A stretch of DNA of 64,000 bases. It comes from Haliotis rubra (lineage: Eukaryota). Position numbers and translations under genes: made by a program. How positions within the stretch are numbered: position 1 is the first letter of the stretch; each line of letters opens with the position of its first letter. The stretch lies in NCBI RefSeq assembly GCF_003918875.1, contig NW_025765481.1, positions 496,001 through 560,000 of the forward strand. Reading direction: 5' to 3'. Below are positions 3,273-58,147 of this stretch, piece by piece. The notes beneath the pieces are model-generated. The model was given only the letters and a program-made list of their open reading frames with translations. It had not been told where the DNA came from and did not search any database.

Positions 3273-3310
3273 GTAGGACATCTACACAGATGAAATTCCT
3301 TACTCCTGGA

Positions 3311-8200: not shown

Positions 8201-8490
8201 AATCTGGTAAGAAACTAGGTTTTAGATGGTATTTAAGGAAACATTTTGTATTATTTTATCATGAAGGGACATTTTAGGAAAGTTTAATTGTAATGTGGAA
8301 AAAAATGACTTAAAGTATTTTGATAATATTGCTTTCACAAATTTGTTTCATAGATGTCATGTTATTCTACAAAGACCGATCTTGCTGACTAACCTATGTA
8401 TATGCAATGTGATTGAATGTGAAATCTGGCTTAAAGTGCACAATTTTACCCTTTTTTGTGAAATCGGTGAAAATATGTGTGAAATAAAAA
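5248..8490 (+). other. Probable long 3' UTR of the FSTL4/5-like gene, with AATAAA at 8483-8488
   Basis: AT-rich, nearly SINE-free stretch after the stop codon. AATAAA is followed by a GT/T-rich tract. Confidence 0.35.
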
Positions 8491-8639
8491 CCTTTTGTTT
8501 AAGAATGTGTTATTCCTTATATTATTGTGTCCCTGTAGGAAATGATGTACCCATGATGTGTCACAGTACCAAATAGTGGCATATGTTACTCATTCTCTCA
8601 AGCACTGGTTTGTCTGGTTTGGACAAATAGTAATAGGCT

Positions 8640-8936
8640 ACCCGTGAAGATCCGGGTGAGAATTGGTCTTCAGTAACCCAAGCTTGTCGTAAGAGGCTAC
8701 CTGTGAAGATCTGGGTGAGAATTGGTCTTCAGTAACCCATGCTTGTTGTAAGAGGCGACAAACAGGATCTGGTGGTCAGGCTCGCTGACTTGGTTGACAC
8801 ATGTCATCATAACCCAATTGCGTAGATTGATGCTCATGCTGTTGATCACTGAATTGTCTGGTCCAAACTCGATTATCTACAGACTGCCACCATATAGGTG
8901 GAAAACCTTGTGAGTGCAGTGTTAACAACCAACTAA
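8640..8936 (+). mobile_element. Short retroposon family C (structured head, no tRNA boxes) with its head duplicated in tandem
   Basis: acccgtgaagatccggg...cttgtcgtaagaggc occurs twice, followed by the family body and an aacc-rich tail. Confidence 0.8.
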
Positions 8937-9721: not shown

Positions 9722-9963
9722 ACCCCTGAAGATCCGGATTAGAATATTGATCTTCAGTAACCCATGCTTGTCGTCAGAGGAGACATACGGGATCGGGTGG
9801 TCAGGCTTGCTGACTTGGTTGACACAATCATGTCATCGGTTCCCATCGATGCTCATGCTGTTGATCACTGGATTGTCTGGTCCAGACTCGATTATTTACA
9901 GACCGCCGCCATATAGCTGGAATATTGCTGAGAGCGGCGTAAAACTAAACTCCCTCACTCACT
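9722..9963 (+). mobile_element. Short retroposon family C
   Basis: Head, body and gctggaatattgctgagagcggcgtaaaactaaac tail. Confidence 0.8.
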
Positions 9964-10091
9964 AATCGACTTCGAACTCGTTGGGGGGTCACCGAGGGAG
10001 GTACACGGATGTCCAGAACCTCTGGGCGACTGAGTCCGCACTTAATGTAGGGCGTTGTCGCATTGTGTTTATAAATCTGACTTACTCCGCA

Positions 10092-10212
10092 TATATAGCA
10101 TCAACCCGGAACTAACTAGCATGTTAAGAAGTTAAAGCCAGGCTTCCCGGCGACTTCTCGAGAGGCAGAGCGGGACACTTGCGCAATTCTATTTAACGCT
10201 GAAGAGGTAAGT
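10092..10212 (+). promoter_or_regulatory. Possible TATA box and non-coding first exon (AG|GTAAGT donor at 10206/10207) for the PAN-mucin gene
   Basis: TATATAG at about 10092, a CpG-richer patch and a perfect donor consensus. No transcript evidence. Confidence 0.3.
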
Positions 10213-10744
10213 GACTATATTGCATTAGGCGGGTTTTCGTACAGATGATATTCGTCTAATTGTACATTACATGGTCAGTAGATATCCCAAATGGCAAGCT
10301 GTCTGTACAAATGTGATGCTGAGCATGCCACGTGGAGCAATTACTCTACCATGTGATTTACTATTCGTATAATTAGATTCACACGAATCTACTGAGATCA
10401 CACAAGTCGCACAACTTTGTTTTATCAAATTAGGTCGCAAGCGCCTGTCTCCATGAATTGTAAAGGGATTCCCATCGAGTCTTAAAACAGTGCTTCCAGG
10501 AGGCTTACAGTTTTAAAATATGACGCAACTGTGTAACTGATTCGACGAATCAGAAATGAAGTGTCTATTATTCTAATGTCTAATACCGTGTTTTTTACAT
10601 GTATATGATTGTATTTGTTTTGTTTTGAGAGGTTTACAAAACTTAGGCAGTATGCGTTAAATGAGAAATGGAAAGAATGGCATTCAAAATGTCGAGATGT
10701 TTTGCCATTTTGCTTCCCATTCGTGAAGACAGTGAATTTAATTC

Positions 10745-12585: not shown

Positions 12586-12869
12586 GTTTTATCCACTGAA
12601 TACCGAGCGCCAAGCAAGAAAATAACAAGTAATATAGTTTGACCAAATTTGGAAGGACGCAGTTCCCCGGCCTTCTATTCCAGGCAGGTGCTGTAGCAGT
12701 CCTCGGAGGTGGTTCACTTGACAAGAAATATTTACCCATGGAATCAAAAGGCAGATTGGAAAATGAAGAAAAAGCAAACATTATGTACAAGCTTAAATTA
12801 TGAAGTATCTTTTCAGTTCCTTATGTGAATACTGAAGACACATTCTTTATAAATACAGGATTTCAAAAG

Positions 12870-15800
12870 TACGGAGTGGGAAGTGTGATTAAAGTTGATT
12901 AAAGAGATGGAGTAGAGTGTAAGTAAAGGTAAGTAGATTAAAGATATGGAGTGGAAAAGAGTGATAAGATAAAGATGTAAAGGTAAGAAGAATTAGATTA
13001 AGAAAAAGAATATGAAAGTAGAAAGGAGAGATGAAAAAGAGATTAAAAGTAGAGGAATTATAAAAAATTAGAAGTGTAATTAAAGAATTAAAAGTAGAAA
13101 TTAAAAGATGAAAGTGGAGTAATGTAACTAAAGAGATTAAAGATTAAAGTTAATGTGAATTAAAGGGAGATTATAGAATATAGAGATATGAGTGAAAGTA
13201 GAAGTTAATGTAATTAAAGAGATTAGCAAAGAAGAGTAGTTTAGCAACTAATTGATGAAATTAAGAAGGATTCATGAAATTAAAGATTATGAAAGTAGAA
13301 AGTTATGATTAAAGGTAACACAAGTGTACATTTGTAATTAAAGTGTAAAGGGAGTAAATGAATTAAAGAGATTATAAAGATTAGAAGAAGTTGTAATTAA
13401 AAGATATGAAAAGTAAAGTGTGTAATTAAAGGGATTAAAAGTTAGAAAGTGTGTAGTCAAAGATTATAAAAGGTATAAATTAATATGTGGAGATGGGAAT
13501 TATGTAATTGATTAAGTTTATGAGATAGAGAGTACATAACAGAAAAGGAATTATGAAAGAATAAAAGTATATGAATTAAGAGAGTAGATATAAATTAGGA
13601 AGTGTGGTGCAAAGAGATTAATGCAATGAAGTGGAGTGTGTAATTAAAGAGATTGTGCAGTAAAATTAAGAGTATGTAATTAAAGAGATTGTGAAGAGGT
13701 ATAAATTAATGTGATAAGAGAGATTATAAGTTGTGTGAATTGTGAATTAGTTTAATGAGATGGAAAGAGTCCACATAACAGAGAGATTATGAGAATAAAG
13801 TATGAATTAGAGTAGATATAAGGAATTAGGAGTAATTAAGAAAAATTATATGTATAGAGGTATGTGAAACTAAGAAAAAGGATTATAAAGGAGTAGGATT
13901 CATGGTCTAAAGAGATTATAAAAGGAATTAGAGTGTTGATTAAAGAGATTATGAAAGTGGAAAGTGTATGATTAAAGATTAGTAAAGGAAATACAAATTA
14001 ATGTGGAAGAGGGTCTGGTGTGAATTGAGGTGTTAGCAAATGAAGGATAAAGGAGTGCAAACAAGAAGAGATTATGAGAGATAAAGAAATATGTAATTAA
14101 GTAGATATAAAAGGTAAAGATTAAAGAGAGTTAAAAGGTAGAAGTGTGTGATTAAAGAGATTGTAAAAAGTAGAAGAGTGTGTGATTAAAGAGATGTAAG
14201 GAATATAAGATTAATGTAAGTGGAGAGATTATAAGTTAATATGATTGAATTAGTTTATGAGATAGAGGGAGATTACATGACAGAGAAAGGATGTAAAGGG
14301 ATAGTATGATTAAATATAAAGTAGGGGAGTATGGTGGAAAAAGAGATGCAGTAAATTAGAAGTGTGTGTAACTAAAGAGATGAAGGGAGTAAAGTGTGGT
14401 CATTAAAATTGAGGTAGGAAGTGTGAATTAGGTGTGCATGAAGAGTGTGATTAAAGAGATGGGATTGATATGGGAGCAGTAAGAGTGGAGTAGAAGTTGA
14501 TGGAAAAATTAAAGTGAAGAAAATAAAGGAGATTATAAGGTTGGCTCCATAGAATGCTGAGAAGATGATAGAGGAGTGTGACTAAAGAGAGATTATAAAG
14601 GGGAAGTAAAGTGTGATTAAATGTAGATGTAAGGGAGTTAGAAGTGTAGAAGTGTGTGATTAGAAGAGATTGTGTGGAGTGGAAGGGAGGTGTAGATAAA
14701 GGGATTAAAGTAAAGTGTGAATTAAAATGGTGAAGGGAAGTGGGATTTTGAATTAAGTAAAATGTAAAAGTGGAAGGGAGTATGATTAAAAGGTTATCAA
14801 AGTGTGATTGAAGAGATTAAGTGGAGTAGAAATTAGGTAGTAAAAGTAGGAAGTGTGGATTAAGAAGAGATTAAAAGTGGAAATTAGAATTAAAGAGATA
14901 AAAGGTAGAAAGTGTGGGATCAGAAAGTCTGAGGTGGGGAGTGTGGATGAGGACTATGAGGATTGGAAGTGTAGGATTACAAAGTGGAAGTGTGTGATAT
15001 GGAGTGGAAGTCAAAGTGAAGAGGTGTAGGATTAAAGGATGATGAAGGTAGAGGAGATGTGGCAAGATGTATGAAAGTTAAAGGTGTGATTAAAGAGATA
15101 TGAAGAGGAGAATGTGAAATTAGAAGTGTGAAGTGTAAAGAGGATTATGAGGTGAGTGGTTTAATGACTAGAAAAAGGATTATGAAGTGGAAGATTCAAT
15201 GATTAAAGAGATTATGAAAGTGTGGAAGTTTGTGATTAAAGGGAATGAAGTGGGTGTTATGATTGAAGGGGTCTTGAGGTAGTAAAGTGTGGTGAGGATT
15301 AATGAAGTTAGGTTTGTGATTAAAGGGATTAATGAGGAGTGGGAGGTGTGATTAAAGAAGTTATGAAGTGGAGTGTGAGGTGTGATTAGAGATTAGCAAG
15401 AAATACAAATTGTGTGTCAGAGGGGTATAAGTTGTGTGATTGGTTAGTTTGTGAGATAGAGGAGATTACATGAGAAGAAGGTGTGAAGTCGAAAATGCTG
15501 TGGATTATTAGTAGATGCAAAGTGAGAGGTGGTGATTGAGGGGTGTGCAGTAGTGGAGAGTGTGTGATTAAAGGATTAGTGAAAGTGGGAGAGGTGGTGC
15601 TGGGATGAGTGATTAGAGGTATAAATTGTGATAGAGGAGATTAAAGTTAATATGGTGTGAATTAGTTTGTAGGGATGGAGGTGCAAACAGAGAAAGAGAT
15701 TATGAAGGATAGAAAGTATGTGATTAATGAGTAGATGTAAAGTGAGGGAGGTGTGCAATTGAGAAGGATTGTGCAATGAGTGGAGTGTGACTGAAGAGGA

Positions 15801-18797
15801 TTATGAGGAGTGGGGTTCGTGATTAGAGGATGTGAAAGAGTGGAGGTGTGTGAGATGAAGGGAATAATGAGGTGAGAGGTGTGTGATTGGGTTGTGGGGG
15901 TGGAGGGTGTGATTAGCAAAGTTGTGCGAGGGTGTAGAGGATGGGAAGTTGAGGGTGGAGGTAGTTTGATTGAGGGGATAGAGGGGTGCAATGAGAGGAA
16001 TTGTGAGGATAGAGAGTATGTGATTGAGGGATTGTAGGGGTGAGGTGTGTGATTGGGAAAGGAGTTGTGGGTGAGTGGAGGTGTGTGACTGAGGGGATGT
16101 GAGGGGAGTGAGAGGTGTGTGATTAGGTGGGGTGAGGGGGTAAGGTGTGTGATTGGGTGTACTGTGAAGGGTCATGTGATTGAGATGGGTTGATGTGGGG
16201 GATGAGGAGTGAGGTGGTGAAGGGTTGTGATGGGAGAAAGGTGGTGGTGAGAAATAGAGGGATTGCAAGGGTGGACCATGTGTGAGCTGTGAGGGATGGA
16301 GGTGTGTGAGCTTGAGGAGGATTGTGAGGGTAGAGGTGTGGTGATTGAGGGGGTGAGGGGTGGGGGTGTGGGGGTGTGTGATTGAAGGGGATTGTGCGTG
16401 GTGTGGAGGTGTGTGATTGAGGGATTGTGAGGGGTGGAGGTGTGTGATTGAGGGAAAATGTGAGGGGGTGGAGTGTTGGCCCAGGATTGGTGGATGTGAG
16501 GAAGTAGAGGTGGAGGGTGTGATTGAGGGTTGTAGACAGGGGTGAGGGGCTGAAGCTGTGTGATTGAGGGGATTGTGAGGGAGTGGAGGTTTGTGATTGA
16601 GGGATTGTGAGGGTAGAGGTGTGTGATTGAGGGAAAATGTGAGGGGTGGAGGTTTGTGATTGAGGGAATTGTGAGGGGTGGAGGTGTGTGATTGAGGGGA
16701 TTGTGAGGTGTGTGATTGAGGGGATTGTGAGGGGTGGAGGTGTGTGATTGAGGGGATTGTGAGGGGTGGAGGTGTGTGATTGAGGGGATTGTGAGGGGTG
16801 GAGGTGTGTGATTGAAGGGATTGTGAGGGGTAGGTGTGTGATTGAGGGGGATTGTGAGGGGTAGAGGTGTGTGATTGAGGGATTGTGAGGGGTGGAGGTT
16901 TGTGATTGAGGGGATTGTGAGGGTGAGGGGTTTGTGATTGAGGGGTATTGTGAGGGGTGGAGGTGTGTGACTGAGTGGTTTATGAGGGTAGAGGTGTGTG
17001 ATTGAGGGAATTGTGAGTGGTAGAGGTGTGTGATTGAGGGAAATGTGAGGGTGGAGGTGTGTGATTGAGGGAATGTGTGAGGGGTGGAGGGTGTGATTGA
17101 GGGGTGTGAGAGGGTGGAGGTGTGTGATTGGAGGGATTGTGAGGGGTGGAGGTGTGTGATTGAGGGATTGTGAGGGGAGGGTGTGTGATGAGGGATTGTG
17201 AGGGAGGAGGTTGTGATGGAGGGATTGTGGAGGTGTGTGATTGATTGGTTTGTGAGGGATGGAGGTGCATGACGGAGAGGATTGTGAGGGATAGAAGTAT
17301 GTGATTGAGTGATTGTAAGGGGTGGGGGTGTGATTGAAGGGATTGTGCGTGGTGGAGGTGTGTGACTGAGGGGATTGTGAGGGGTAGAAGTGTGTGATTG
17401 AGTGGAATGTGAGGGTGGAAGGTGTGTGATTGAGTGTACTGTGAGGTGGAGGTCATGTGATTGAGGGGATCATGGGTTGATGTGGGGAGATGAGGGGAAG
17501 TGGTGAAGGGAGTTGTGATGGAGAAAGGAGATTGAGGGTGGAGGAAATGAGGGGATTGCATGGGGTGGACCATGAGTTAGAGGGGGATTGTGAGGAGGGA
17601 GAGGTGTGTGATTGAGGGGATTGTGAGGGGTAGAGGTGTGTGATTGAGTGACGTGTGTGAGGGGTGTGGGGGTGTGGGATTTGTGATTGAGGAGGTTGTG
17701 ATTGGTGGAGGGGGTGGGATTGAGGGATTGTGAGGGAGGGAGTTTTGTGATTGGGGTGGTTTGTGAGGGGTGGAGGTGTGTGATTGAGGGGATTGTGAGG
17801 GTTGAGGTGTGTGATTGAGGGATTGTGAGAGGTGGAGGTGTGTGATTGAGGGGTTTGTGAGGGGGAGGTAGAGGTGTGTGATTGAGGGGAAAATGTGAGG
17901 GGTGTAGGTTTGTGATTGAGGGATTGTGAGGGGTGGAGGTGTGTGATTGAGGGATTGTGAGGGGTGTGATTGAGGGGTTGTGAGGGTGGAGGTGTGTGAT
18001 TGAGGGGATTGTGAGGGTGGAGGTGTGTGATTGAGGGGATTGTGAGGGGTGGAGGTGTGTGATTGAGGGGATTGTGAGGGGTAGAGGTGTGTGATTGAGG
18101 GGATTGTGAGGGGTAGAGGTGTGTGATTGAGGGGATTGTGAGGGGTTGAGGTTTGTGATTGAGGGGATTGTGAGGGGTGAAGGTTTGTGATTGAGGGGAT
18201 TGTGAGGAGTGGAGGTGTGTGATTGAGTGGTTTATGAGGGGTAGAGGTGTGTTATTGAGGGGATTGTGAGTGGTAGAGGTGTGTGATTGAGGGGAAATGT
18301 GAGGGGGGGAGGTTTGTGATTGAGGGAATGTGAGGGTGGAGGTGTGTTGAGGGGTGTGAGGGGTGTGATTGAGGGGGTTGTGAGGGGTGGAGGTGTGTGA
18401 TTGAGGGGATTGTGAGGATTGTGAGGGGTAGAGGTGTGTGATTGAGGGGATTGTGAGGGGTAGAGGTGTGTGATTCAGGAAATTGTGAGTTGTGTGATTG
18501 AGTGGTTTGTGAGGAATGGAGGTGTGTGACTGAGAGGATTGTGAGGGATAGAAGTGTGTGATTGAGTGAATTGTGAGGGGTGGGGGTGGGGGTGTGTGAT
18601 TGAATTGATTGTGCGTGGTGGAGGTGTGTGACTGAGGGGATTGTGAGGGGTAGAAGTGTGTGATTGAGTGTGCTGTGAGGGAAGTCATGTGATTGAGGAT
18701 GGGTTGATGTGGGGAGATGAGGAAGTGGTGAAGGGAGTTGTGATGGAGAGAAGATTGAGGTGGAGAAATGAGGGGATTGCATGGGGTGGACCATGAG
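12870..18797. repeat. About 5.9-kb purine/G-rich satellite (about 28-30-bp unit gtgtgattgaggggattgtgaggggtggag) with a 1.2-1.3-kb higher-order repeat
   Basis: C is almost absent on the + strand. The landmark gaggggattgcatggggtggaccatg recurs at about 16270, 17565 and 18785. Confidence 0.9.
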
Positions 18798-19298
18798 TAA
18801 CTCTGAGTGCACTTTGGATCTATGCAGTGTTTCTGTTTTAGGATCTTACATACATGGGTCCCCGACTTTTGCTTCATATCGTTCACCTTGCAAATCTCGT
18901 TCTGGTGTCAAAAGGTAATCAAATATTCATTATTTCGTACAAACTGTTAAACTTGACGTAAAGAATATTTAGTAGTTCTGTTAACCAGAAAGAAGGAATA
19001 TTGGACTACATCCGTCAGTTGACTATGCAAGGCTCGTCATTAAATATGGTAAATAACTTACATGTACTGCTTTAACGCCGTTTTAAACAATATTCTAGTA
19101 ACATTCACGGCTTGTCAACTAAACGTGCCGCTATATAGCAGGAATATTGCCGAGTGCGGCGTACAACTAAACTCACTCACTCAACTTAAAGTGGGAAGTC
19201 ATAAAGGTTGCAGACGCCCATCACTATGAAAGCAACGAGCCAGGGTTTGGTGCTGACAAACCCGGAGACAGGGCGAACCAGGATCGAACCCACAATCA

Positions 19299-19548
19299 AC
19301 CCGTGAAGATCCGGGTTAGAATTGATCTTCAACAACCCATGCTTGTCGTAAGAGGCGACTAACGGGATCGGGTGGTCAGGCTCGCTGAATTGGTTGACAC
19401 ATGCCATCGAATCCCAATTGCATAAATCGATGCTCATGCTGTTGATAACTGGATTGTCTGGTCCAGATTCGATTATTCACAGACCACCGCCATATAGCTG
19501 GAATATTGCTGAGTGCGGTGTTGAACAACAAACCAAGCAATTAAATGA
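19299..19548 (+). mobile_element. Full-length short retroposon family C with TSD
   Basis: TSD aacccacaatca at 19287-19298 and 19549-19560. The element begins acccgtgaag. Confidence 0.9.
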
Positions 19549-20002: not shown

Positions 20003-20224
20003 GTGCAACAAATATTAAGAAGGGTTGGAAGGGATCCCCCGACGACGTGGTGGGGTACAGGGTAGTGGCTGATCTCAATGCCTGTAAGGCTGTCCTTCAG
20101 AAATATGACACGGCAATGGCGGGCGCATTCTGCTCCGGAGAATACTCGTGTTACTTGTACGCGACCGACTCAAAGCTAACAGAAGATGCTAGTTGTACGT
20201 TCTTTAGGAGGGAGCGCATTACAG
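20003..20224 (+). CDS. PAN/apple-like domain exon of a type I membrane mucin-like protein
   Basis: ttgcag acceptor, G|GTAAGA donor, phase 1-1. Translates ATNIKKGWKGSPDDVVGYRVVADLNACKAVLQKYDTAMAGAFCSGEYSCYLYATDSKLTEDASCTFFRRERIT and aligns without gaps to the 58364 exon over the Cys core. Confidence 0.8.
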
Positions 20225-20354
20225 GTAAGAATATTAAAAATAAACATAAAAAGCTGCCAAAGTGAAGAAATGAAGGAAGGTATTTACATTACCACAAGTT
20301 GTCCTTATCAGTGTTCAGACATCGAGTAGCCAGTTTCTCCTTTCCTCTCTCTCG

Positions 20355-20990
20355 GGTCCCACCTCTCCCTCCCTGTGCCCCTCCCCTCTCCATTTCAGTG
20401 TCCAACCTCTCCCTCCCTGTGCCCCTCCCCTCTCCATTTCAGTGCCCCACCTCTCCCTCCCTGTGTCCCTCCCTCTCCACTCCGTGTTCCACCTCCTCCT
20501 TCCTGTGCCCCCCCCCCTCCCTCCACTCCAGTGTTCCACCTCTCCCTCCCTGTGCCCCTTCCCCTCCATTTCAGTGTCACACGTCTCCCTTCCTGTGCCC
20601 CTTCCCTCTCCATTTCAGTGTCCCACCTCTCCCTCCCTGTGCCCCTCCCTCTCCATTTCAGTGTCCCACGTCTCCCTCCCTGTGCCCCTCCCATCTCCAT
20701 TTCAGTGTCCCACGTCTCCCTCCCTGTGCCCCTCCCTCTCCATTTCAGTGTCCCACCTCTCCCTCCCTGTGCCCCTCCCTCTCCATTTCAGTGTCCCACC
20801 TCTCCTCCCCTGTGCCCCTCCCTCTCCATTTCAGTGTCCCACCTCTCACTCCCTGTGCCCCTCCCTCTCCATTTCAGTGTCCAACCTCTCCCTCCCTGTG
20901 CCCCTCCCTCTCCAGTGTCCCATTTCCCTGTGCCCCACCTCTCCCTCCCTGTGCCCCTCCCTTCTCCACCTCCGTGTCCCACCTCTCCCT
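20355..20990. repeat. 43-bp pyrimidine-rich minisatellite (cacctctccctccctgtgcccctccctctccatttcagtgtcc)
   Basis: Direct tandem copies. Confidence 0.9.
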
Positions 20991-21077
20991 TTCGCTCTTT
21001 CTCCCCAGTATCCTTCTCTGCACCCTATCGTGTGACCCCATATTATTGCAAATAACCGCATATAACCTCTGCCACAG

Positions 21078-21260
21078 CCACAACAGCTGCCCACACAGCT
21101 GCGTCTGAAGCAGTTAGCACGGAACGGAATGCTGCTACAACCACCTCGACTGTAGAACCAACCACCTCGACTGCAAACAAAACCACCTCGACTGCAGAAC
21201 CAACCACCTCGACTGCAAAACCAAATTACTTGATGACCACAGCGACTCATTCAAAGTCAG
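21078..21260 (+). CDS. Thr-rich mucin-like exon 1
   Basis: ccacag acceptor, AAGTCAG|GTATAT donor, 183 nt, phase 1-1. Translates ATTAAHTAASEAVSTERNAATTTSTVEPTTSTANKTTSTAEPTTSTAKPNYLMTTATHSKS. Confidence 0.75.
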
Positions 21261-22183
21261 GTATATGGTTTCAAAATTCATAACTTTTAAGCAGATTTGC
21301 TGTTGTAGTAGAACACTGTTCAAACTTACTTTCTTCTTTTTAAATATTTTTCAAAAATATAACTATTACAAGGTAGTGTATAACGATTTTGACATTGAAA
21401 ACAAAATGAAATAGTGTCAGAGCCAAAATTTGTCATCGATTCCCCACATCGGTACAATGTTTGAAGCCAATTTCTGGTGTCCCCCGCCGTGATATTGCTG
21501 GAATATTGCTAAGTGTAAAACCATGTTCACTCTGTTTATAAACAGCGTAGCCTCTTCCTTTTTATTTCTCTCCCTACTATATTTCACACTTCCTACACAC
21601 GTTCTCTCCCTTTACCTAACGCTACTTTGTCTATTTCTGGTGTCCCCTGCGGTGATATTGCTGGAGTATTGCTAAAATCGGCGTAAAACCATATTCACTC
21701 TGTTTATAAACAGTGTAGCCTCTTTCTTTTTAAATCTCACTACCTACACACGTACCTAAGTTTCTGTCTCCCCTATAGTCTTTTCCCAGTGATGATGATT
21801 CGGAGATTTAACATACGCTTTCTGACATAATGCATATATCGCACACGGGCCTGCAGGCTATCTAGTGTTTGATGGAAAGGGGGTTGATTTGGCCGAAAGA
21901 TATAGCAACCTGAAGGGGGCGTTAGAGTTGCATAATTAACTTTTTGTGAGTTTTTAATTTCGAAATTTGCCAGATGTTGTTGGTTTGATGAACTACTGGA
22001 TGGTTTGGTTTGTATTTGGTTTGTTTGTTTTTGAATGTTTGTTTTAATGTTAGCACTATTTGGTTATTTGGTTATGATTATAAGCAGCCTAAAAGGAAGT
22101 TTTAATTGGAAATATCCCTAAGGCTTATCAATAGAGGTGACTCTATATTGTTAAATCTATGTTTTCTTACCTCTTTGTAACAG

Positions 22184-22300
22184 CAGCAACACCTTCGACA
22201 ACTGTGTCTGCAGCCGTTACAACGGAACCGAATGCAACCTCAACCACGTCGACTGCAGAACCAAACAACATTACGGTTCCAGGGACTCGTCCAAAGTCAG
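22184..22300 (+). CDS. Thr-rich mucin-like exon 2
   Basis: taacag acceptor, AAGTCAG|GTAGGA donor, 117 nt. Translates AATPSTTVSAAVTTEPNATSTTSTAEPNNITVPGTRPKS. Confidence 0.75.
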
Positions 22301-22779
22301 GTAGGATTGTTTATACAGTTTATCTTCAGTGAAAACACTGAAACGGACTGGCTGTTGAAGTAGACTGTATTTCTAACTTGCACTCTTCTGTGAAAAACAG
22401 TTTTCAAACATACCAATAACGAGGTTGTGAATCGCAATTTTGAAACTCACTTACACATAAATATATTGTAGCATGGCATATTTTATATAAGTAACACACC
22501 AAACAGACGAAGCAAGTTTTACGTTGTGTCAACAGAAGTGCATGACGGGTAAGGATAATAATTAAAAAGCAACATAAAGATTGCCTCAAAGCCAATATCT
22601 TTCTCTTTGTAAGAATTGAAGGAGGACTTTACATCAACATAATACATTTCCTTGACCTCTGTCTCCAAACGGAGTCGCCATATGATATTAACAATCTGTC
22701 TTTGTCAGTTTCTCTGTCTCTCTCTCTCACCTCCTTTTTCTCCCTCTCCCTTCCCTGTTTCTAAATGTCACCTCCTCAC

Positions 22780-23420
22780 TCTTTGCACTTCTCTCCATTT
22801 CTCTACCCCCTCGCTCTTTGCACTTCTCTCCATTTATCTACCCCGTCGCTCTTTGCACCCCTCTCCATTTATCTACCCCCTCGCTCTTTGCACCTCTCTC
22901 CATTTATCTACCCCGTCGCTCTTTGCACCTCTCTCCATTTATCTGCCCCCTCGCTCGTTGCACCTCTCTCCATTTATCTACCCGTCGCTCTTTGTCGCGC
23001 TCTTTGCACCCTTTTTATCTACCCCCTCGCTCTTTGCCTTTATCTCCCCGTCGCTCTTTGCACCTTCTCCATTTCTACCCCTCTCTTTGTACCCTCTCCA
23101 TTTATCTACCCCGTCGCTCTTTGCACCTCTCCATCTACCCCTCGCTCTTTGCACCTCTCTCCATTTATCTACCCGTCGCTCTTTGCACCCTCTCCATTTA
23201 TCTACCCCTCGCTCTTGCACCTCTCTCCATTTATCTACCCCGTCGCTCTTTGCACCTCTCTCCATTTCTCTACCCCCTTGCTCTTTGTACCTCTCTCCAT
23301 TTATCTACCCCGTCGCTCTTTGCACCTCTCTCCATTTATCTACCCCCTCGCTCTTTGCACCTCTCTCCATTTATCTACCCCGTCGCTCTTTGCACCGATC
23401 TCCATTTATCTACCCTTCGC
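22780..23420. repeat. 35-bp pyrimidine-rich minisatellite (ctctttgcacctctctccatttatctaccccgtcg)
   Basis: Direct tandem copies. Confidence 0.9.
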
Positions 23421-23554
23421 ACCTCTCACTGTCCAGCTCTCCATGTCACTGTCATGTATGTTACTCGCCTCGCCTCCCACCTCTTCCCATTTCTCTATCC
23501 CCACCTCCCTCTCTGTCCCTCTGGTTGTTCATGCATCGAGTGATTCCATATCAT

Positions 23555-24793
23555 TACCAGTAGGTGTCACAAAAGTTTCCGGCCTCACCATGAACAGATC
23601 GCACAAACTCACCAAAACTGGAGAATAGAATCTTAGCATGTGCTTGACACGCAAAACACGAATTCCACGTGCTATAATTTGCTATATATAGCTGTCAAAC
23701 AGCATTACCCTATCGTTTGCTCTCAAAATGTAGAGAACCCAATGCAGGGCTGTGATGAAGTATTTTCGTTTAAATAAGTTTACCCCGAAGCAAATTCATA
23801 ATGAGATGAAACAAACATAAGTGACAAATGTAGTTCGGTGAAACAGTGGTATACTGAATGTACAGGCGCAGGGCAGGCGCAGCACTGAAGACGAGCCCCG
23901 GTCTGGTCGCCCTCGTAAAGTGACTACCGAAGATAAAATTGATGCTGTTCTCGACCAAATAATTAACCAATTAACTACTGCACATGACATTAGCAAAACA
24001 TCAATGGAAAGAACAAACCATGAACATTTGCATATGGACAAGGAGTCTGCCCGTTGGGTGCCCGGAATGTTATCTGAAGAACACAGACGTCAGAGAGTCA
24101 TGGTTTGTCGTCAGATTCTCGAGGACTATCGGAGAGATCCACATGGGTCATATTGTACTCAGGATGAAACCTGAATTCATCACTTTGACCCAGAGACAAA
24201 AAGTCAGAGTATGCAGTGGAAGCACGTGACGTCACCAACGCCCCCAAAATTTACAAAAATCGTCTTCCAGTGGCAATGTCCGTTTTCTGGGACTCTGAGG
24301 GCGTAATCATGATGGACTATTTAAAGAAGGGTTCAACAATAAATTGTCACATTACGCTGAGGAATTGCGTAGGTTGCGTGATCAGATCAGATGAGAGAAA
24401 AGGTAAACTTCACCGAGGTGTCTGACTCCTCCAGGACAATGCTCCAGTTCACACGGCCCAAGTAGCAGTGAGTTCAGGACCGGACTGTGGCTTCAAGATC
24501 CTTCCTCACCCAGCCTATTCTCCAGATCTTGTCCCTCCTGTCTTCTTCCTCTTCCCTCAGCATGAATCTGTCCTCGGGGGCCGCAAATTTGAGACGGATG
24601 AGGGGTCATCACTGCTGTGGAGGAGACTTTAGGGTCACGTGACAAACAATGGTTTTCAATTTCAGACGGGTTAACTATGCAAGAGAAACTTCATTGAAGT
24701 GAAGACGGATTATGTTGAAAAATAAGTACAACAATTTTCATATAGATCGCATATTAGTTTAGGAGGCCGGAAACAATTGGGACAGCCCTCGTA
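23555..24793 (+). mobile_element. Degenerate mariner DNA transposon
   Basis: Imperfect TIRs (...tgtcacaaaagtttccggcctc / gaggccggaaacaattgggaca...cctcgta). Transposase relics SARWVPGML, QDET, VFWDSEGVIMMDYL, QDNAPVH and PAYSPDL carry stops and frameshifts. Confidence 0.9.
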
Positions 24794-24847
24794 CACTGGT
24801 AACTGGGTCATCTTACCCCTTTCTAATAACCGCAACATTTTTGACAG

Positions 24848-25030
24848 CTGTGTCTGAAGCAGTTACAACGGAACTGAATGCAATTACAACCACCTCCACT
24901 ACAGAACCTACCACCCCGACTACAGAACCAACCACCCCGACTACAGAACCAACCACCCCGACTACAGAACCAACCACCCCGACTACAGAACCTAACTACT
25001 CGAAGTTTACAGCTATTCCTGGGAAGTCAG
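24848..25030 (+). CDS. Thr-rich mucin-like exon 3 with TTEPTTP repeats
   Basis: ttgacag acceptor, AAGTCAG|GTATGA donor, 183 nt, with 21-bp coding repeats. Confidence 0.75.
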
Positions 25031-25474
25031 GTATGATTGTTTACATACACTTCTATCAATATTCAAAATTAATTTAAACACACAGGTTGTTTAATGAAGT
25101 AGAATCTTTCCTTTCAAGAATATTTTTCAAAAATATAATTTGGAATACATGTACATTCCAATATATCGATTGTTTCAACAGGAATGTCTTTATGATAGGA
25201 ATATTGAAAAGAAACGTAAATCGGTACTAAACCTAAACTTTGTCACTTTCGGAAATTAAAGGAACGTCTTTACCTCAACATTAGTTATCGTGATCTGTCT
25301 ACAAACAGAGAGACCATACAATATAGCAAACTGTGTCTACCCCGCTCTCTATTCTTTTTCTTTCTCTCTTCTCTGGGCCTCTGTCTACCCTGCTCTATCA
25401 ACAAATCAACCATCCTCTCCCTTTCTACCCCTGTATCTTTCTACCCCTTTGCCCCTTCTCTCTCCATTTTTATC

Positions 25475-25750
25475 TTCTCTGAGATCAGAGAATCAGCGTC
25501 TTCTTGTTATCCCCAAAGTCAAACAAGCTAAATATGGACATCGTGCCTTCTCTTATGCTGCAGTAAAAGTATGAAATGACCTCCCTCAATCCATCCGATC
25601 AAGTTCCGACTTCTAGACATTGAAATCTCTCCTGCAAACACTTCTTTAAACCAGCCAACCATTAGTTCCCAGCTATGTACTCAACTTGTGCGCTTTGAGC
25701 AGGATATCAAGCCTGGATAGGCGCGTTATAAATATTCTTCTTCTTATTAC
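25475..25750 (+). mobile_element. 3' fragment of an L2/CR1-group LINE
   Basis: LRS..RLLVIPKV...YGHRAFSYAAVKV*NDLPQSIR motif, followed by cgctttgagc...gcgttataaat and a short repeat tail. Confidence 0.7.
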
Positions 25751-25899
25751 CTCTCTTTCCATCTCTATCATATTTCTCTCTCTCTTTCTCTCTGGCCCCT
25801 CCCCATATGTCGGTGTCTCCACATCCCGTCGCTGCTTCCTTTTGTTGTAGAAAATGTGTTGTGTGCATGCACTATAATAGATAACTAATTCGTCGACAG

Positions 25900-26163
25900 C
25901 TGTGCCAAAAGCTTTTACAACGGAATCGACTGCAACTACAACTACCCCGATTGCAACTGCAACTACCCCGATTGCAACTACAACTACAGCGACTGCAACT
26001 ACAACTACCCCGACTGCAACTACAACTACAGCGGTTGCAACTACAACTACCCTGACTACAACTACAACTACACCGACAGCAACTACACCTACCCCGACTG
26101 CAACTACAACTTCCCTGACTGCAGAATCAAACTTTGCGAATGCAGTCGGCCAGTCAAAGTCAG
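25900..26163 (+). CDS. Thr-rich mucin-like exon 4
   Basis: gacag acceptor, AAGTCAG|GTATGA donor, 264 nt. Translates AVPKAFTTESTATTTTPIATATTP...AESNFANAVGQSKS. Confidence 0.75.
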
Positions 26164-26596
26164 GTATGACTGATAGGAGTATTGTATATAGGTTCAAAAT
26201 ATTAAATTAATACAGATCGTCTTGAGGTGGAACTAGTGTCAAACTCTCTAAAGTACATATTCAAAGAACACCTATTAGAGTGAATGACCATTTTGAGATC
26301 TCTGTACAAGTTAATATCATTTTATAACATGACAGATGCTATATGATGGGTAGTCTTTTGAATATACACATGTATACATATTCCTGGTATTCGTAAATAT
26401 CGTTTTTTGTTATTCTTATTCATCGTTTCTTGTTATTCATATTTATTGTAATTCATACATATAGTTTCTTGTTATTCATATTATCGTTTCATGTTATTCA
26501 TATTATCGTTTCATGTTATTCATACTAAGTGTGTACTGGCTATAGTGTTCCAGTTAAGAGAGAGTTAATTACTTTTATCCACCCTTCCTTATACAG

Positions 26597-26699
26597 ACGG
26601 TTCTCTGATGTCAACGAATACCCAAGTAATAATCGCCGTAACCATAGGAACCCTCGCGGTTGCATCCCTCATCACATTTTTCGGTATACTTATACTTGG
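26597..26699 (+). CDS. Transmembrane exon of the PAN-mucin gene
   Basis: ccttatacag acceptor, GG|GTAAGT donor, phase 1-2. Translates DGSLMSTNTQVIIAVTIGTLAVASLITFFGILILG. Confidence 0.8.
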
Positions 26700-26719
26700 G
26701 TAAGTAGACCACGATTAAC

Positions 26720-27460
26720 GGTGTACCTGACGAGGCCGGGTAAACACGTCCTTCTGTGTACCTGACAAGGCCGAGTAAACACGTCCTTCTGTGTACCTGA
26801 CAAGGCCGAGTAAACACGTCCTTCTGTGTACCTGACAAGGCCGAGTAAACACGTCCTTCTGTGTACCTGACAAGGCCGACTAAACACGTCCTTCTGTGTA
26901 CCTGACGAGGCCGTCCTTCTGTGTACCTGAAACCGACTAAACACGTCCTTCTGTGTACCTGACAAGGCCGACTAAACACGTCCTTCTGTGTACCTCCTTC
27001 TGTGTACCTGACGAGGCCGACTAAACACGTCCTTCTGTGTACCTGACGAGGCCGAGTAAACACGTCTTACTGTGTACCTGACAAGGCTGAGTAAACACGT
27101 CCTTCTGTGTACCTGACGAGGCGGAGGGTACACGTCCTTCTGGTAGACAAGGCCGGAGTACACGTCCTTCTGTGTACCTGACAAGGCCGAGTAAACACGT
27201 CCTTCTGTGTACCTGACAAGGCCGAGTAAACACGTCCTTCTGTGTACCTGACGAGGCCGAGTGTAACACGTCCTTCTGTGTACCTGACGAGGCGGAGTGT
27301 ACACGTCCTTCTGTGTACCTGACGAGGCGGAGTGTACACGTCCTTCTGTGTACCTGACAACGCCGAGTAAACACGTCCTTCTGTGTACCTGACCCGACTA
27401 AACACGTCCTTCTGTGTACCTGACGAGGCGGAGTGTACACGTCCTTCTGTGTACCTGACA
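26720..27460. repeat. 35-bp minisatellite (gtgtacctgacaaggccgagtaaacacgtccttct)
   Basis: About 21 tandem copies starting 20 bp after the TM-exon donor. Confidence 0.95.
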
Positions 27461-27893
27461 ACACCTGAGTCTTTCTCTGTAGTAAGATTAATTTCTGTAT
27501 ATTCGGGTGATTTGACAAGGTCGAATAAACACTTTTGTGTGTGTAATCCAATGAATACGTTATACGCTTCCTGTATACATGGGTACGTTCTAGTTTGTTG
27601 TAACCTTCCATGCATCTTATGTTTCCTTTAACTATCGTTTGCAATCGATAAACTGACGTCGATGGCCTGAAAGAAAAACAAATGTTATTGTTTCAAATCA
27701 CATGATATTTATTTCTTCAGCAGGAAAAATTTAATCCAAAAGTCTCAAAAACATATCGATAATCGAAGACAAAATCTGTACAAAATATATACAATTTCCT
27801 AAGTAAAGAATAGACACCTGTGTTGAGTCAACTGTAGAGAAATCAAGCCTTCAGCATTGTGCCAGCGTGAGATACATTATTCTCTTTTTTCAG

Positions 27894-27954
27894 AAGACGC
27901 AAACGAAGGAGACGTCGTTTTGATCTAGTGGCGGGTCCCACTGACCATAACTAG
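27894..27954 (+). CDS. Terminal exon: basic stop-transfer and short cytoplasmic tail
   Basis: tctcttttttcag acceptor, phase 2. Translates (G)RRKRRRRFDLVAGPTDHN*, with TAG at 27952-27954. Confidence 0.8.
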
Positions 27955-28793
27955 AGAAGCGAAAAACGTTCCAACGCCGTCTTCCTCAGTTGAAATTCAC
28001 CAGCAATCTTCATCCTTCCAGAAAGGACCCGGATGTTCTTTGAAAAAACAATGGTGTCACATTCGTAGCATGAATTACTCCATATCAAAATCGAACAGTG
28101 TCGTCAAATCAGTTGTCCCATCGCTCCACCAGTGTCATGGTGCTGGTTTGAATCAAGCATGTTTCATAATCTTGGGTATTATCGAGTAAACTGTATATTA
28201 ATGTTGTATGTATATATTCATTGTGTATGGGTTAAATGTCGGGAGGCCATTGTATTTGAAAGCCAATTAAAGACACCACTTAGGATTTTTGTTTATTTGA
28301 CGTCGCTCTCAGCAATTTCCAACCGATCTTTAAATAATCGAGTCTGGACCAGACAGTTCAATGACTGTCATCCTGAGCATCAACTTGCGCCACTGGGATA
28401 TGATAAAATACATCTAGGAATCCATATTAAGGCTTGGATTCGAACACAGTTCAAAATAGATTGTGATAAGTTTATGATTACCCTATTTAAACGCAATGCT
28501 GTTATAGTAATGTATTACAGTCCCCGAACCACATCGTCCCTAATGCCTAGCCTTCCCTGCAATGCTAAAGCACTAGATGAAGCAAGTCTAGATTTTTCCA
28601 GGTTCGGGCTGAATCTCCCATCTCACTGGGGCTCCTTTTAAATTAAAAAGGGTTTATTTGTTACTATCAAAATTATATATATTCAGGGACTAAGCGTTAG
28701 TCTAGTAATGTATGTTTATCTCCGATAGCGGTCTGTCTATTAAGCCATTACAGGCATATGAGATACTGTATCAGATAGGTTCACACAATAGGG

Positions 28794-28926: not shown

Positions 28927-29305
28927 TCACACAATAGGGACTCAATAAGGTAACTTATTAAACATTCTAGAGATTGCACATTCTTTTTCGAAACGACGCT
29001 ATTCATTGTTTGTGAGACTACAATAAAATGACGCATTTGATCCTATTTGGGAATACTGTTCAGTTTGTGTGCATGGTTACATGAGGCTATTGAAAGCCGA
29101 TATATATAAGTCTACAGCCTGGTGGAATGCTGGCGGTGTGTGTTATAGTGATGTTTCAGATCAGTGGCGAGTTGGTAATTGCGCACTGAGTTGGTATACA
29201 GGGAAAGGGTGGGACACTTCAGTAACATCCGTGATTCAGTTGTTTTGATGATTGTAGACAAGTAGGGCTCAGTCGATAACCGGTGTTTTCCGGATATTCC
29301 GAAAT

Positions 29306-30111
29306 TGTGTCTGCAGTGGTACGTCAGCTGATAACCTTAGTGTCTGCAGTGGTACGTCAGCTGATAACCTTTGTGTCCGCAGTGGTACGTCAGCTGATAA
29401 CCTTTGTGTCCGCAGTGGTACGTCAGCTGATAACCTTTGTGTCCGCAGTGGTACGTCAGCTGATAACCTTTGTGTCCGCAGTGGTACGTCAGCTGATAAC
29501 CTTTGTGTGGTACGCAGCTGATAGTGTCCGCAGTGGTACGTCAGCTGATAACCTTTGTGTCCGCAGTGGTACGTCAGCTGATAACCTTTGTGTCCGCAGT
29601 GGTACGTCAGCTGATAACCTTTGTGTCCGCAGTGGTACGTCAGCTGATAACCTTGTGTCCGCAGTGGTACGTCCGCTGATGATAACCTTTGTGTCCGCAG
29701 TGGTACGTCAGCTGATAACCTTTGTGTCCGCAGTGGTACGTCAGCTGATAACCTTTGTGTCTGCAACGTCCGCTTAACCTTTGTGTCCGCAGTGGTACGT
29801 CAGCTGATAACCTTTGTGTCCGCAGTGGTACGTCAGCTGCCTTTGTGTCCGCAGTGGTACGTCAGCTGATAACCTTTGTGTCCGCAGTGGTACGTCAGCT
29901 GATAACATTTGTGTCCGCAGTGGTACGTCCGCTGATAACCTTTGTGTCCGCAGTGGTACGTCAGCTGATAACATTTGTGTCCGCAGTGGTACGTCAGCTG
30001 ATAACCTTTGTGTCCGCAGTGGTACGTCAGCTGATAACCTTTGTGTCCGCAGTGGTACGTCAGCTGATAACCTTTGTGTCTGCAGTGATCAGCTAACCTT
30101 TGTGTCTGCAG
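29306..30111. repeat. 33-bp minisatellite (gtgtccgcagtggtacgtcagctgataaccttt)
   Basis: About 24 tandem copies. Confidence 0.95.
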
Positions 30112-58115: not shown

Positions 58116-58147
58116 CCTCTGGGTTCCGAGGCTTCTAGTCTTTCACT

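What the first reader, a model, noticed from the sequence alone, without database searches (positions are those of the whole stretch)
20003..27954. Hidden type I membrane protein: PAN/apple head, modular mucin stalk, TM helix and polybasic tail
Seen in sequence: seven GT-AG exons splice in frame (222+183+117+183+264+103+61 nt). They encode a Cys-containing PAN-like domain, about 250 aa of Thr-rich stalk with N-glycosylation sequons (NKT, NAT, NIT), a hydrophobic helix of about 24 aa, and RRKRRRRFDLVAGPTDHN*. The ORF track does not show this as a gene. Established knowledge: PAN/apple modules bind proteins or carbohydrates. Inference: a lineage-specific cell-surface receptor or adhesin presented on a glycosylated stalk, possibly acting in mucosal immunity, adhesion or gamete recognition.
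Basis: partly seen in the sequence, partly recalled or inferred. Interest (0 to 1): 0.7.

Follow-up and report, generated by a model that had tools for sequence, protein, structure and literature searches.

The report
Abalone membrane mucin with PAN head
This is a real, expressed abalone gene for a cell-surface protein that holds a small, fast-evolving PAN/apple-type binding domain on a long sugar-coated stalk; it is a lineage-restricted member of a familiar protein design, and its function is still unknown.

Summary
The seven exons are real. All have AG/GT borders and phase-1 introns. Contigs of two RNA-like runs show five of the six junctions directly; two DNA runs of the same organism show none.

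The model lacked its 5' end. A signal-peptide exon (18842-18914, ATG at 18854) and a probable 5'UTR exon ending at 10206 complete a 397-aa reading frame. It reads: signal peptide, 74-aa head, about 250-aa Thr/Pro/Ser stalk built from four duplicated exons, one membrane helix, eight Arg/Lys, and an 11-aa tail.

Pfam finds no PAN domain in the head. The head is nevertheless homologous to Haliotis domains that Pfam scores as PAN_1 (phmmer 1e-8 and 3e-6 against 1.8 billion proteins; hhalign 96.9 %). With those relatives in the alignment it folds confidently, and the only strong PDB matches are PAN/apple domains (Z 11-12).

The head is a variant. The canonical third and fourth cysteines are gone, and two new cysteines are conserved in the H. 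asinina ortholog.

That ortholog is annotated as 'uncharacterized protein' and has the same nine-exon layout. No protein of this gene from any other species turned up. dN/dS is near 1, and the head exon is the most diverged part of the locus.

Function (adhesion or recognition receptor) remains an inference. The scan has noted other PAN-mucin genes in this genome.

The parts
10180..10206 (+). 3' end of a probable first (5'UTR) exon. The donor is GT at 10207. The transcription start is unknown.
   Evidence: The window block 9845-10726 is collinear with L001 9684-10544, which holds the H. asinina first coding exon at L001 10001-10027. The window reads ..FNAEE|DLTY across the proposed junction, against VNAEE|DLTY in H. 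asinina. There is no in-frame ATG here, so the exon is non-coding in this species. It was not checked with reads.
18842..18914 (+). Signal-peptide exon. The acceptor AG is at 18840-18841, the ATG at 18854, and the phase-1 donor GT at 18915. It encodes MGPRLLLHIVHLANLVLVSK plus the first base of Gly21.
   Evidence: It is 75 % identical to the N-terminus of the H. asinina ortholog. It has the same 61-nt, phase-1 layout as the paralog's first coding exon at 57592-57652. The hydrophobic core has a KD mean of 2.0. The length of RNA contig 7 of X2 fits.
20003..20224 (+). Head exon: a 74-aa divergent PAN/apple domain with four Cys (protein positions 48, 64, 70, 85).
   Evidence: Frame. Pfam: no hit. 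Sequence homology: phmmer hits to Haliotis PAN proteins and hhalign 96.9 %, E 1.4e-10. Structure: AF2 pLDDT 89.7; Foldseek and VIA top hits are all PAN/apple. The acceptor context is conserved in H. asinina.
21078..21260 (+). Stalk exon 1 (61 aa, Thr-rich, NKT sequon).
   Evidence: It is paralogous to the other stalk exons. Its 3' end is joined to exon 3 in RNA contigs of X1 and X2 (table 5c).
22184..22300 (+). Stalk exon 2 (39 aa; NAT and NIT sequons).
   Evidence: Joint 22300>24848, GT..AG, in X1 and X2. It is 74 % identical to H. asinina.
24848..25030 (+). Stalk exon 3 (61 aa; five copies of a 7-aa TTEPTTP-type unit; NYS sequon).
   Evidence: Joints 22300>24848 and 25030>25900.
25900..26163 (+). 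Stalk exon 4 (88 aa; 21-nt tandem repeat, 9.4 copies). In-frame length alleles of -6 and -48 nt occur in other individuals.
   Evidence: Joints 25030>25900 and 26163>26597 in X2, and the indels at 26055 and 26012>26061.
26597..26699 (+). Transmembrane exon (about 25 hydrophobic residues). A 6-nt in-frame deletion allele lies at about 26684.
   Evidence: The 19-residue KD window peaks at 2.42. It is 76-83 % identical to H. asinina. Joints are in X2.
27894..27954 (+). Last coding exon: RRKRRRRR, then FDLVAGPTDHN, then TAG. The 3'UTR runs on to at least about 28137.
   Evidence: RNA contig 9 of X2 runs from exon 4 through here, past 28100. It is 74 % identical to H. asinina.

Best explanation
The locus is a nine-exon, roughly 18-kb abalone (Haliotis) gene for a 397-aa type I membrane glycoprotein.

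Shown:
- The exons are spliced as predicted and the reading frame is complete.
- The head is homologous to Haliotis PAN domains and models as a PAN/apple fold.
- The stalk is 58 % Thr+Ser+Pro and is built from four duplicated phase-1 exons that carry internal repeats.
- One strongly hydrophobic helix is followed by eight basic residues.

Inferred mechanism: the signal peptide is removed near Gly21. The stalk is densely O-glycosylated and stiff, so it holds the PAN head tens of nanometres above the membrane. The head binds an extracellular ligand, either a glycan (as in the galactose-binding PAN/apple lectins SML-2 and TgMIC4, its best structural matches) or a protein. The polybasic stretch fixes the topology and probably docks on acidic lipids or ERM-type cortical adaptors, as in CD43 and CD44. 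The 11-residue tail has no recognisable signalling motif. The protein would therefore act as an adhesion or capture receptor, or as a glycocalyx component, rather than as a signalling receptor. The unusually diverged head suggests a ligand that itself changes quickly, such as a microbe or a gamete.
For: Splicing and expression: one search shows five GT..AG joints in the exon-only runs X1 and X2, and none in the DNA runs X5 and X6.

Complete reading frame.

Ortholog: it has the same architecture and the same nine exons.

PAN homology:
- phmmer E 1.1e-8 (P0004) and 3.2e-6 (P0005) in a 1.84-billion-protein library.
- The matched domains score PAN_1 at 19.8-21.7 bits, and other domains of the same proteins reach 29.6 bits.
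- hhalign gives 96.9 %, E 1.4e-10.
- The family profile's best PDB sequence hits are SML-2, TgMIC4 and EtMIC5.

Fold: pLDDT 89.7, pTM 0.78. Foldseek TMq 0.81 and rmsd 1.5 A to SML-2. VIA Z 11.8, 11.7, 11.5 and 11.1 to SML-2, TgMIC4-A5, plasma kallikrein and FXI apple domains, and the top 25 rows are all PAN/apple-type folds.

Stalk, TM and sequons.

Constraint on the frame: all indel alleles seen are in frame, and the ORF is intact in two species at dS 0.12-0.47.
Against: No Pfam PAN model hits the head or its ortholog, even at E<=10 or E<=1.

The confident structure depends on canonical PAN relatives in the alignment. With only the head and its ortholog, AF2 fails (pLDDT 40.4).

dN/dS is about 0.7-1.4 in every exon, and 6 of 8 listed exonic variants are non-synonymous. 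That fits weak constraint as well as it fits diversifying selection.

There are no tissue, localisation, glycosylation or ligand data. The nature of X1 and X2 as RNA is inferred from their coverage pattern, since the tool lists them as 'RNA?'. Signal peptide and topology rest on hydropathy and charge only; no dedicated predictor was available.
Confidence: 0.6

Rival explanations
1. It is a passive membrane mucin. The protein mainly adds a hydrated, anti-adhesive glycocalyx or mucus layer, possibly after shedding of the ectodomain. The PAN head is a structural cap without a specific ligand.
For: About 63 % of the protein is PTS stalk. The stalk length varies within and between species through in-frame repeat changes, as in barrier mucins. 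The short tail has no signalling motif.
Against: The head keeps four cysteines and its hydrophobic core across two species despite 58 % residue replacement. It sits on its own conserved exon. Related Haliotis genes repeat the PAN module up to four times, which suggests the module itself is used.
Confidence: 0.2
2. It is a young, weakly constrained gene drifting close to neutrality. It is transcribed and keeps an open frame, but it contributes little to fitness.
For: dN/dS is about 1 in all exons. The listed polymorphisms are 6 non-synonymous to 2 synonymous. Relatives exist only in Haliotis. No protein of this gene from any species other than H. asinina was found.
Against: A 1.2-kb ORF with eight coding exons is intact in both species, at silent divergence up to 0.47. 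All splice sites are conserved. Every indel seen is a multiple of 3. The TM helix core is nearly invariant.
Confidence: 0.15
3. The head is not a PAN/apple domain at all. The resemblance would be a short cysteine-and-hydrophobic pattern, and the model would be an artefact of the alignment supplied.
For: There is no Pfam hit. AF2 fails without the canonical relatives. Two of the four core PAN cysteines are missing.
Against: Significant sequence hits to PAN-containing Haliotis proteins came from a search with the head alone. Profile-profile comparison gives 96.9 % over 65 columns at 42 % identity. The neighbouring paralog in the same window is 30 % identical (E 4e-9) and itself scores PAN_1 at E 6.5e-4.
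Confidence: 0.05

Closest known systems
Haliotis asinina XP_067673110-XP_067673114 'uncharacterized protein' (P0007, P0003, P0006, P0008, P0009)
   Same: It is the ortholog. The locus is collinear, with nine exons in the same order and the same phases. The layout is the same: signal peptide, 4-Cys head, four stalk modules, TM, polybasic tail. Even the intronic satellites sit in the same introns.
   Different: The head is only 42-44 % identical. The stalk is about 30 aa shorter, with no expansion of the 7-aa unit in module 3. Some H. asinina isoforms start at an ATG in the first exon, which is non-coding here.
Haliotis multi-PAN mucins: H. rubra XP_046561553.1 (P0004), H. cracherodii XP_071108088.1 (P0005), and the paralog at window 57592-58603
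   Same: They share a homologous PAN module (25-38 % identity), Thr-rich linkers, phase-1 module exons, and the same kind of 61-nt signal-peptide exon.
   Different: Those proteins keep the canonical C-x3-C...C...C core, carry 2-4 PAN modules, and end without a TM-plus-polybasic anchor (P0005 ends in a hydrophobic, GPI-signal-like tail). This gene has one module with two core cysteines replaced and two new ones.
Apicomplexan microneme PAN/apple lectins (Sarcocystis SML-2, Toxoplasma MIC4, Eimeria MIC5)
   Same: They are the best structural and best PDB-sequence matches. They are adhesins whose apple domains bind galactose-type sugars, as shown by PDB entry titles 2yip and 2ll4.
   Different: Identity is 12-18 %. 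They are soluble or complexed multi-apple proteins of parasites, with no mucin stalk or TM. Whether the sugar-binding residues are conserved was not examined.
Vertebrate 'head-on-a-mucin-stalk' type I proteins (TIM-1/HAVCR1, CD43, PSGL-1, MAdCAM-1)
   Same: The overall design is shared: a small N-terminal binding domain or none, a long O-glycosylated PTS stalk, and a single TM. CD43 and CD44 also have a juxtamembrane basic cluster that binds ERM proteins (my own knowledge: Yonemura et al. 1998). NCBI named an isoform of the P0005 gene 'hepatitis A virus cellular receptor 1-like'.
   Different: There is no homology. The heads are Ig domains or absent, and the cytoplasmic tails are longer and carry signalling motifs. 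The resemblance is in design only.

Membership tests
PAN/apple domain superfamily (Pfam clan PAN; PAN_1 PF00024) | A match to a Pfam PAN model at or above the gathering score. | tested here: not met
   No PAN family was reported for the head exon, for the longer ORF around it (both at E<=10), or for the H. asinina head at E<=1.
PAN/apple domain superfamily (Pfam clan PAN; PAN_1 PF00024) | Significant sequence homology to bona fide PAN domains. | tested here: met
   The head alone hits P0004 (E 1.1e-8) and P0005 (E 3.2e-6) in 1.84 billion proteins. Both pass the PAN_1 gathering score as whole proteins (30.2 and 53.6 bits). hhalign of head+ortholog against seven Haliotis PAN domains gives 96.9 %, E 1.4e-10.
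PAN/apple domain superfamily (Pfam clan PAN; PAN_1 PF00024) | Fold: a five-stranded antiparallel sheet packed on one helix (b-b-a-b-b-b). | tested here: met
   The predicted model only: strands 4-10, 15-20, 39-43, 48-52 and 58-68, helix 24-33, pLDDT 89.7. VIA Z 11-12 and Foldseek TMq about 0.8 to SML-2, MIC4, FXI/kallikrein apple, plasminogen PAN and HGF N domains. Caveat: the model fails without PAN relatives in the alignment.
PAN/apple domain superfamily (Pfam clan PAN; PAN_1 PF00024) | Conserved four-cysteine core (helix Cys to strand-4 Cys, plus the C-x3-C...C pair). | tested here: not met
   Only the first helix Cys and the strand-4 Cys (head residues C27 and C49) are kept. The other two core positions are Leu31 and Met38. 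New Cys43 and Cys64 are present and are conserved in H. asinina. Their pairing could not be measured, because no coordinates were available to scripts.
Apple domain in the strict sense (factor XI / prekallikrein type) | A third disulfide linking the N- and C-terminal ends of the module. | tested here: not met
   There is no Cys at either end of the head, although P0005 domain 2 has both.
Type I single-pass membrane protein | An N-terminal signal peptide, one TM helix, and positive charge on the cytoplasmic side. | tested here: met
   The signal-peptide exon has a basic n-region, a 14-aa hydrophobic core and a small-residue S-K-G end. There is a single KD peak of 2.42 at residues 354-372, followed by eight R/K. 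This is a sequence-feature test only; no SignalP or TMHMM was available.
Mucin-domain (PTS) glycoprotein | A long Pro/Thr/Ser-rich region with tandem repeats. | tested here: met
   The 251-aa stalk is 39 % T, 10 % P and 9 % S. There is a 21-nt repeat of 9.4 copies in exon 5 and a 7-aa unit repeated 5 times in exon 4. In-frame repeat-number alleles occur.
Mucin-domain (PTS) glycoprotein | Dense O-glycosylation. | not testable with these tools
   This needs glycoproteomics or lectin blots.

The most novel reading that the evidence does not exclude
The head exon is a target of diversifying or balancing selection in an abalone cell-surface recognition system (pathogen capture or gamete/self recognition). 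The exon and its flanking intron are 2-4 times more diverged from H. asinina than the rest of the locus, the disulfide pattern has been rewired, and local duplication of the head exon is ongoing in H. asinina. These features would mark a lineage-specific 'variable head on constant stalk' receptor family clustered on this chromosome.
Probability: 0.15. Interest if true: 0.6.

Novelty: new member of a known kind. Interest (0 to 1): 0.3.

Why it matters
The work adds a complete, RNA-supported gene model. The gene seems to be missing from this species' public protein set. It belongs to a Haliotis-restricted expansion of PAN-mucin surface proteins.

The head shows how a PAN/apple fold can apparently survive replacement of one of its two core disulfides by a new cysteine pair. 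It also shows why HMM libraries miss such domains.

Abalone are a classic system for fast-evolving recognition proteins and are farmed animals with serious infectious diseases. If the fast divergence of the head reflects selection, the gene would be a candidate recognition receptor. Otherwise it is an ordinary lineage-specific membrane mucin.

Tried and rejected
- Pfam on every exon gave nothing useful. The only rows were chance matches (Madanin, DUF6133).
- The word-index protein search was blank with the head exon alone. With the ortholog's head region or its TM+tail region it returned only the ortholog itself.
- P0001 and P0002 of the big search are repeat-driven artefacts: 10 and 18 short stretches, with unrelated or bacterial Ig-like Pfam content.
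- An alternative acceptor 17 nt upstream (ccag|ta at 19986) was considered, because the upstream in-frame stretch resembles the paralog's N-terminus. I rejected it because the H. asinina models join the signal peptide directly to the residue equivalent to 20003, and the ttgcag|gt context is conserved.
- AF2 on head plus ortholog alone failed.
- P0003 was not on record for a contig look-up. The longest isoform, P0007, worked.
- Cys-Cys distances in the model could not be computed, because coordinates are not exposed.
- The joined spliced protein has no reference, so it was not sent to any search, fold or look-up tool. All such calls were made exon by exon by reference. Joining was done only inside local scripts, to check the frame and composition.


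Full report
**The observation**

They have the stated lengths. Each is preceded by AG and followed by GT, and counted back from the TAG at 27952-27954 they give one stop-free frame. Every intron is phase 1.

The total of 1133 nt is not divisible by three. The first listed exon starts with the last two bases of a codon, so the model had to be incomplete at its 5' end.

There are two small corrections. The basic run is RRKRRRRR (eight residues, not seven). There are four N-x-S/T sequons: NKT, NAT, NIT and NYS.

**The missing 5' end**

At 18854 an ATG opens a 61-nt coding stretch, MGPRLLLHIVHLANLVLVSK plus one base. It ends at a GTAAT donor in phase 1. Joined to 20003 it gives a 1194-nt, 397-aa frame from ATG to TAG (a local script only).

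A paralog in the same window starts with a signal-peptide exon of exactly the same length and phase, at 57592-57652.

The 12 nt before the ATG follow an AG acceptor at 18840-18841 and read DLTY. A GTAAGT donor at 10207 is preceded by ..FNAEE. The H. asinina ortholog reads MRHSVNAEE|DLTY-MGSR across the same junction. The two regions are collinear at 81 % identity.

In this window the upstream exon has no in-frame ATG, so it is a 5'UTR exon, and translation should start at 18854. Two H. asinina isoforms also start there. This upstream exon is inferred and was not checked with reads.

**Expression and splicing**

The single reads call was used on 22120-28100.

- Runs X1 and X2 are listed as 'RNA?'. 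They cover exons only.
- Runs X5 and X6 are from the same organism. They cover exons and introns evenly at about 2 % difference from the window, so they are DNA of another individual.

X1 and X2 carry these GT..AG joints (the tool's coordinates plus its stated 3-nt ambiguity):

- 22300>24848.
- 25030>25900.
- 26163>26597.
- A joint reported as 26691>27893 with one letter between. This is 26699>27894 in an allele that lacks one copy of a 6-nt direct repeat at the end of the TM exon. The same deletion is in X5 and X6.

The 'goes back' joint 24973>22181 has 33 letters between that are identical to the last bases of exon 2 (21228-21260). The contig therefore runs exon 2 > exon 3 > exon 4.

None of these joints is in the DNA runs. 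They are therefore splicing and not a processed copy.

Contig 7 of X2 extends far enough upstream to hold exon 1, the signal-peptide exon and about 27 nt more, but the tool does not show those letters.

**In-frame length alleles and variants**

- -6 nt and -48 nt in stalk exon 4.
- -6 nt in the TM exon.

Of the eight exonic single-base variants listed, six change the residue.

**What the protein is**

The order of parts is:

- a signal peptide with a 12-aa hydrophobic core (KD mean 2.0) and an S-K-G end;
- a 74-aa head with four Cys;
- a 251-aa stalk that is 39 % Thr, 15 % Ala, 10 % Pro and 9 % Ser;
- one hydrophobic helix, with the 19-residue KD window peaking at 2.42 at residues 354-372;
- eight Arg/Lys;
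- the 11 residues FDLVAGPTDHN.

The four stalk exons share their 5' ends and the ..AAGTCAG|GTA 3' ends. They are duplicates of one module. Exon 5 holds 9.4 copies of a 21-nt unit.

**Is the head a PAN/apple domain?**

Pfam says nothing for the head, for the longer ORF around it, or for the ortholog's head. The word-index search with the head was blank.

That left the protein open, so I used the one exhaustive search on the head exon alone. It returned five hits.

- Two are repeat artefacts (P0001, P0002).
- Three are Haliotis proteins: the H. asinina ortholog (P0003, E 7e-10), an H. rubra protein with two PAN_1 domains and mucin linkers (P0004, E 1.1e-8), and an H. cracherodii protein with four PAN domains (P0005, E 3.2e-6).

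The very domains that match the head score PAN_1 at 19.8-21.7 bits (gathering score 21.4). Other domains of the same proteins reach 29.6 bits.

The window's own paralog exon (58325-58603) is 30 % identical to the head (E 4e-9) and scores PAN_1 at E 6.5e-4.

A profile of head plus ortholog aligns to a profile of seven Haliotis PAN domains with 96.9 % probability, E 1.4e-10, over 65 columns.

A profile of all nine has only PAN/apple modules among its PDB sequence matches. The best are SML-2 (E 0.004), TgMIC4 and EtMIC5.

**The predicted fold**

With the nine-sequence alignment, AlphaFold2 gives pLDDT 89.7 and pTM 0.78, with a b-b-a-b-b-b layout.

- Foldseek's top 50 PDB matches are PAN/apple modules or proteins that contain them. 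SML-2 has TMq 0.81 and rmsd 1.5 A. Others are HGF N, plasminogen PAN, FXI/prekallikrein apple, AMA1 and a fungal copper oxidase.
- The Foldseek-independent VIA search gives Z 11.8, 11.7, 11.5 and 11.1 for SML-2, TgMIC4-A5, plasma kallikrein and FXI. Its first 25 rows are PAN/apple-type folds, including MANEC and WSC.

One honest caveat: with only the head and its ortholog in the alignment, the prediction fails (pLDDT 40.4). The fold assignment therefore rests on the homology evidence above and is not independent of it.

**A variant, not a standard member**

In the nine-domain alignment only two cysteines are invariant, head residues C27 (helix) and C49 (strand 4). This is the classic helix-to-strand pair.

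The other classic pair (C-x3-C...C) is Leu31 and Met38 in the head. Two new cysteines, C43 at the end of strand 3 and C64 in strand 5, are present here and in H. asinina. A replacement disulfide is a reasonable inference. I could not measure distances, because no coordinates are exposed.

The N- and C-terminal cysteines of true apple domains are absent.

**Comparison with H. asinina**

Locus L001 is collinear over the whole gene. It has nine exons in the same order. The intronic satellites also lie in the same introns:

- the G-rich 32-bp array in intron 0;
- the 43-bp C/T-rich array after the head exon;
- the 35-bp array after the TM exon.

Residue identity by part:

| Part | Identity |
|---|---|
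| Signal peptide | 75 % |
| TM exon | 76-83 % |
| Tail | 74 % |
| Stalk modules | 50-76 % |
| Head | 42-44 % |

Nei-Gojobori dN/dS is 0.7-1.4 for every exon. The head has dN 0.44 and dS 0.47, against dS 0.12-0.32 elsewhere.

The head exon (JC distance 0.45) and the intron next to it (0.55-0.75, barely alignable) are far more diverged than other exons and introns of the gene (0.13-0.31). A 3.7-kb block upstream is at 0.09.

The reading frame, the splice sites and the cysteines are nevertheless maintained, and all indels are in frame. This pattern fits either diversifying selection on a recognition surface or weak constraint. One pairwise comparison cannot tell them apart.

H. asinina also carries a truncated, 92 %-identical copy of the 5' half of its head exon about 670 bp upstream, so this exon is prone to local duplication.

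**How it probably works (inference)**

The stalk composition is that of a mucin domain. If it is O-glycosylated it will be extended; about 0.25 nm per residue is my recollection for mucin domains. It would then present the head well above the glycocalyx.

The best structural matches include sugar-binding apple domains. The PDB titles name SML-2 with thio-galactose and TgMIC4-A5 with lacto-N-biose. Other PAN modules bind proteins, so the class of ligand is open.

The basic run directly after the helix obeys the positive-inside rule. It also resembles the juxtamembrane basic clusters through which CD43, CD44 and ICAM-2 bind ERM proteins (my own knowledge, not tested).

The remaining 11 residues carry no motif that I recognise. 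I therefore read the protein as an adhesion or capture receptor, or a structured glycocalyx component, rather than a signalling receptor.

**Novelty and context**

The ortholog is in RefSeq as an uncharacterized protein. Two literature searches found no paper on it.

No protein of this gene from another species was found, even with the highly conserved TM+tail as the word source. The gene therefore seems to be unannotated in the window's species.

Earlier first-reader notes list several other PAN-mucin genes in this genome. One is in this window (57592-58603, which I confirmed as a PAN-like paralog) and one lies 110 kb further on. The scan has thus met this kind of gene before on other DNA.

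The design (binding head, mucin stalk, single TM) is well known. What is particular here is the Haliotis-restricted, HMM-invisible PAN variant with a changed cysteine pattern and a very diverged head exon.

The joined spliced protein has no reference and was not sent to any search, fold or look-up tool. Those calls used single exons by reference, or public proteins returned by the tools.

Noticed in passing
window 57592-57652 and 58325-58603 (+): This is a second gene of the family. A 61-nt signal-peptide exon is followed by a 279-nt phase-1 exon encoding a more canonical PAN domain (PAN_1 E 6.5e-4, PAN_3 E 3.8e-3). Its closest relative is domain 2 of H. cracherodii P0005 (66 bits). The following exons were not found before the window ends.
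   Followed up: partly
window 58890-59900 (+): A Tc1/mariner-type transposon (HTH_23, HTH_28, HTH_Tnp_Tc3_2 and weak DDE_3 matches) lies in the intron after the paralog's PAN exon. A degenerate mariner-like element with frame breaks lies in intron 3 of the main gene (about 23850-24700). There the DNA runs show depth spikes and internal deletions.
   Followed up: partly
window 12800-18800: About 6 kb of purine-rich satellite (GC skew up to +0.95; a 32-bp G/T-rich unit with about 70 copies at 16288-18668) fills the intron between the 5'UTR exon and the signal-peptide exon. A related array (76-78 % identity) occupies the same intron in H. asinina.
   Followed up: partly
window 20356-20990, 22770-23415, 26721-27461, 29305-30087: There are four minisatellites with units of 43, 35, 35 and 33 bp. 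Three are inside introns of the gene and one is downstream. The arrays after the head exon and after the TM exon are also present at the same places in H. asinina. The DNA runs show a 649-nt shorter allele of the third array (26817>27467).
   Followed up: partly
window 4991-8697: A 3.7-kb block is 90 % identical (JC 0.09) to H. asinina, far more conserved than the gene studied. In H. asinina it starts inside the end of an upstream Kazal/Ig-domain gene (1179-aa product), so it may be that gene's last exon and long 3'UTR, or conserved non-coding DNA.
   Followed up: no
L001 19220-19336 (H. asinina): This is a truncated duplicate of the 5' half of the head exon (118 nt, 92 % identical to the real exon), about 670 bp upstream of it. 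There is no counterpart in the window.
   Followed up: partly
window 25520-25740; also 19100-19540, 21470-21730, 57940-58110: These are copies of short interspersed elements. Some have a tRNA-like head and share the tail motif ..GGAATATTGCTGAGTGCGGCGTAAAACTAAACTCACTCACTC. The element at 25520-25719 reaches word depths of 1277-5066 in the DNA runs, against about 15-60 for unique sequence.
   Followed up: no
window 60460-63440: A roughly 3-kb A/T-rich satellite with a unit of about 59-60 bp lies downstream of the paralog's PAN exon.
   Followed up: no
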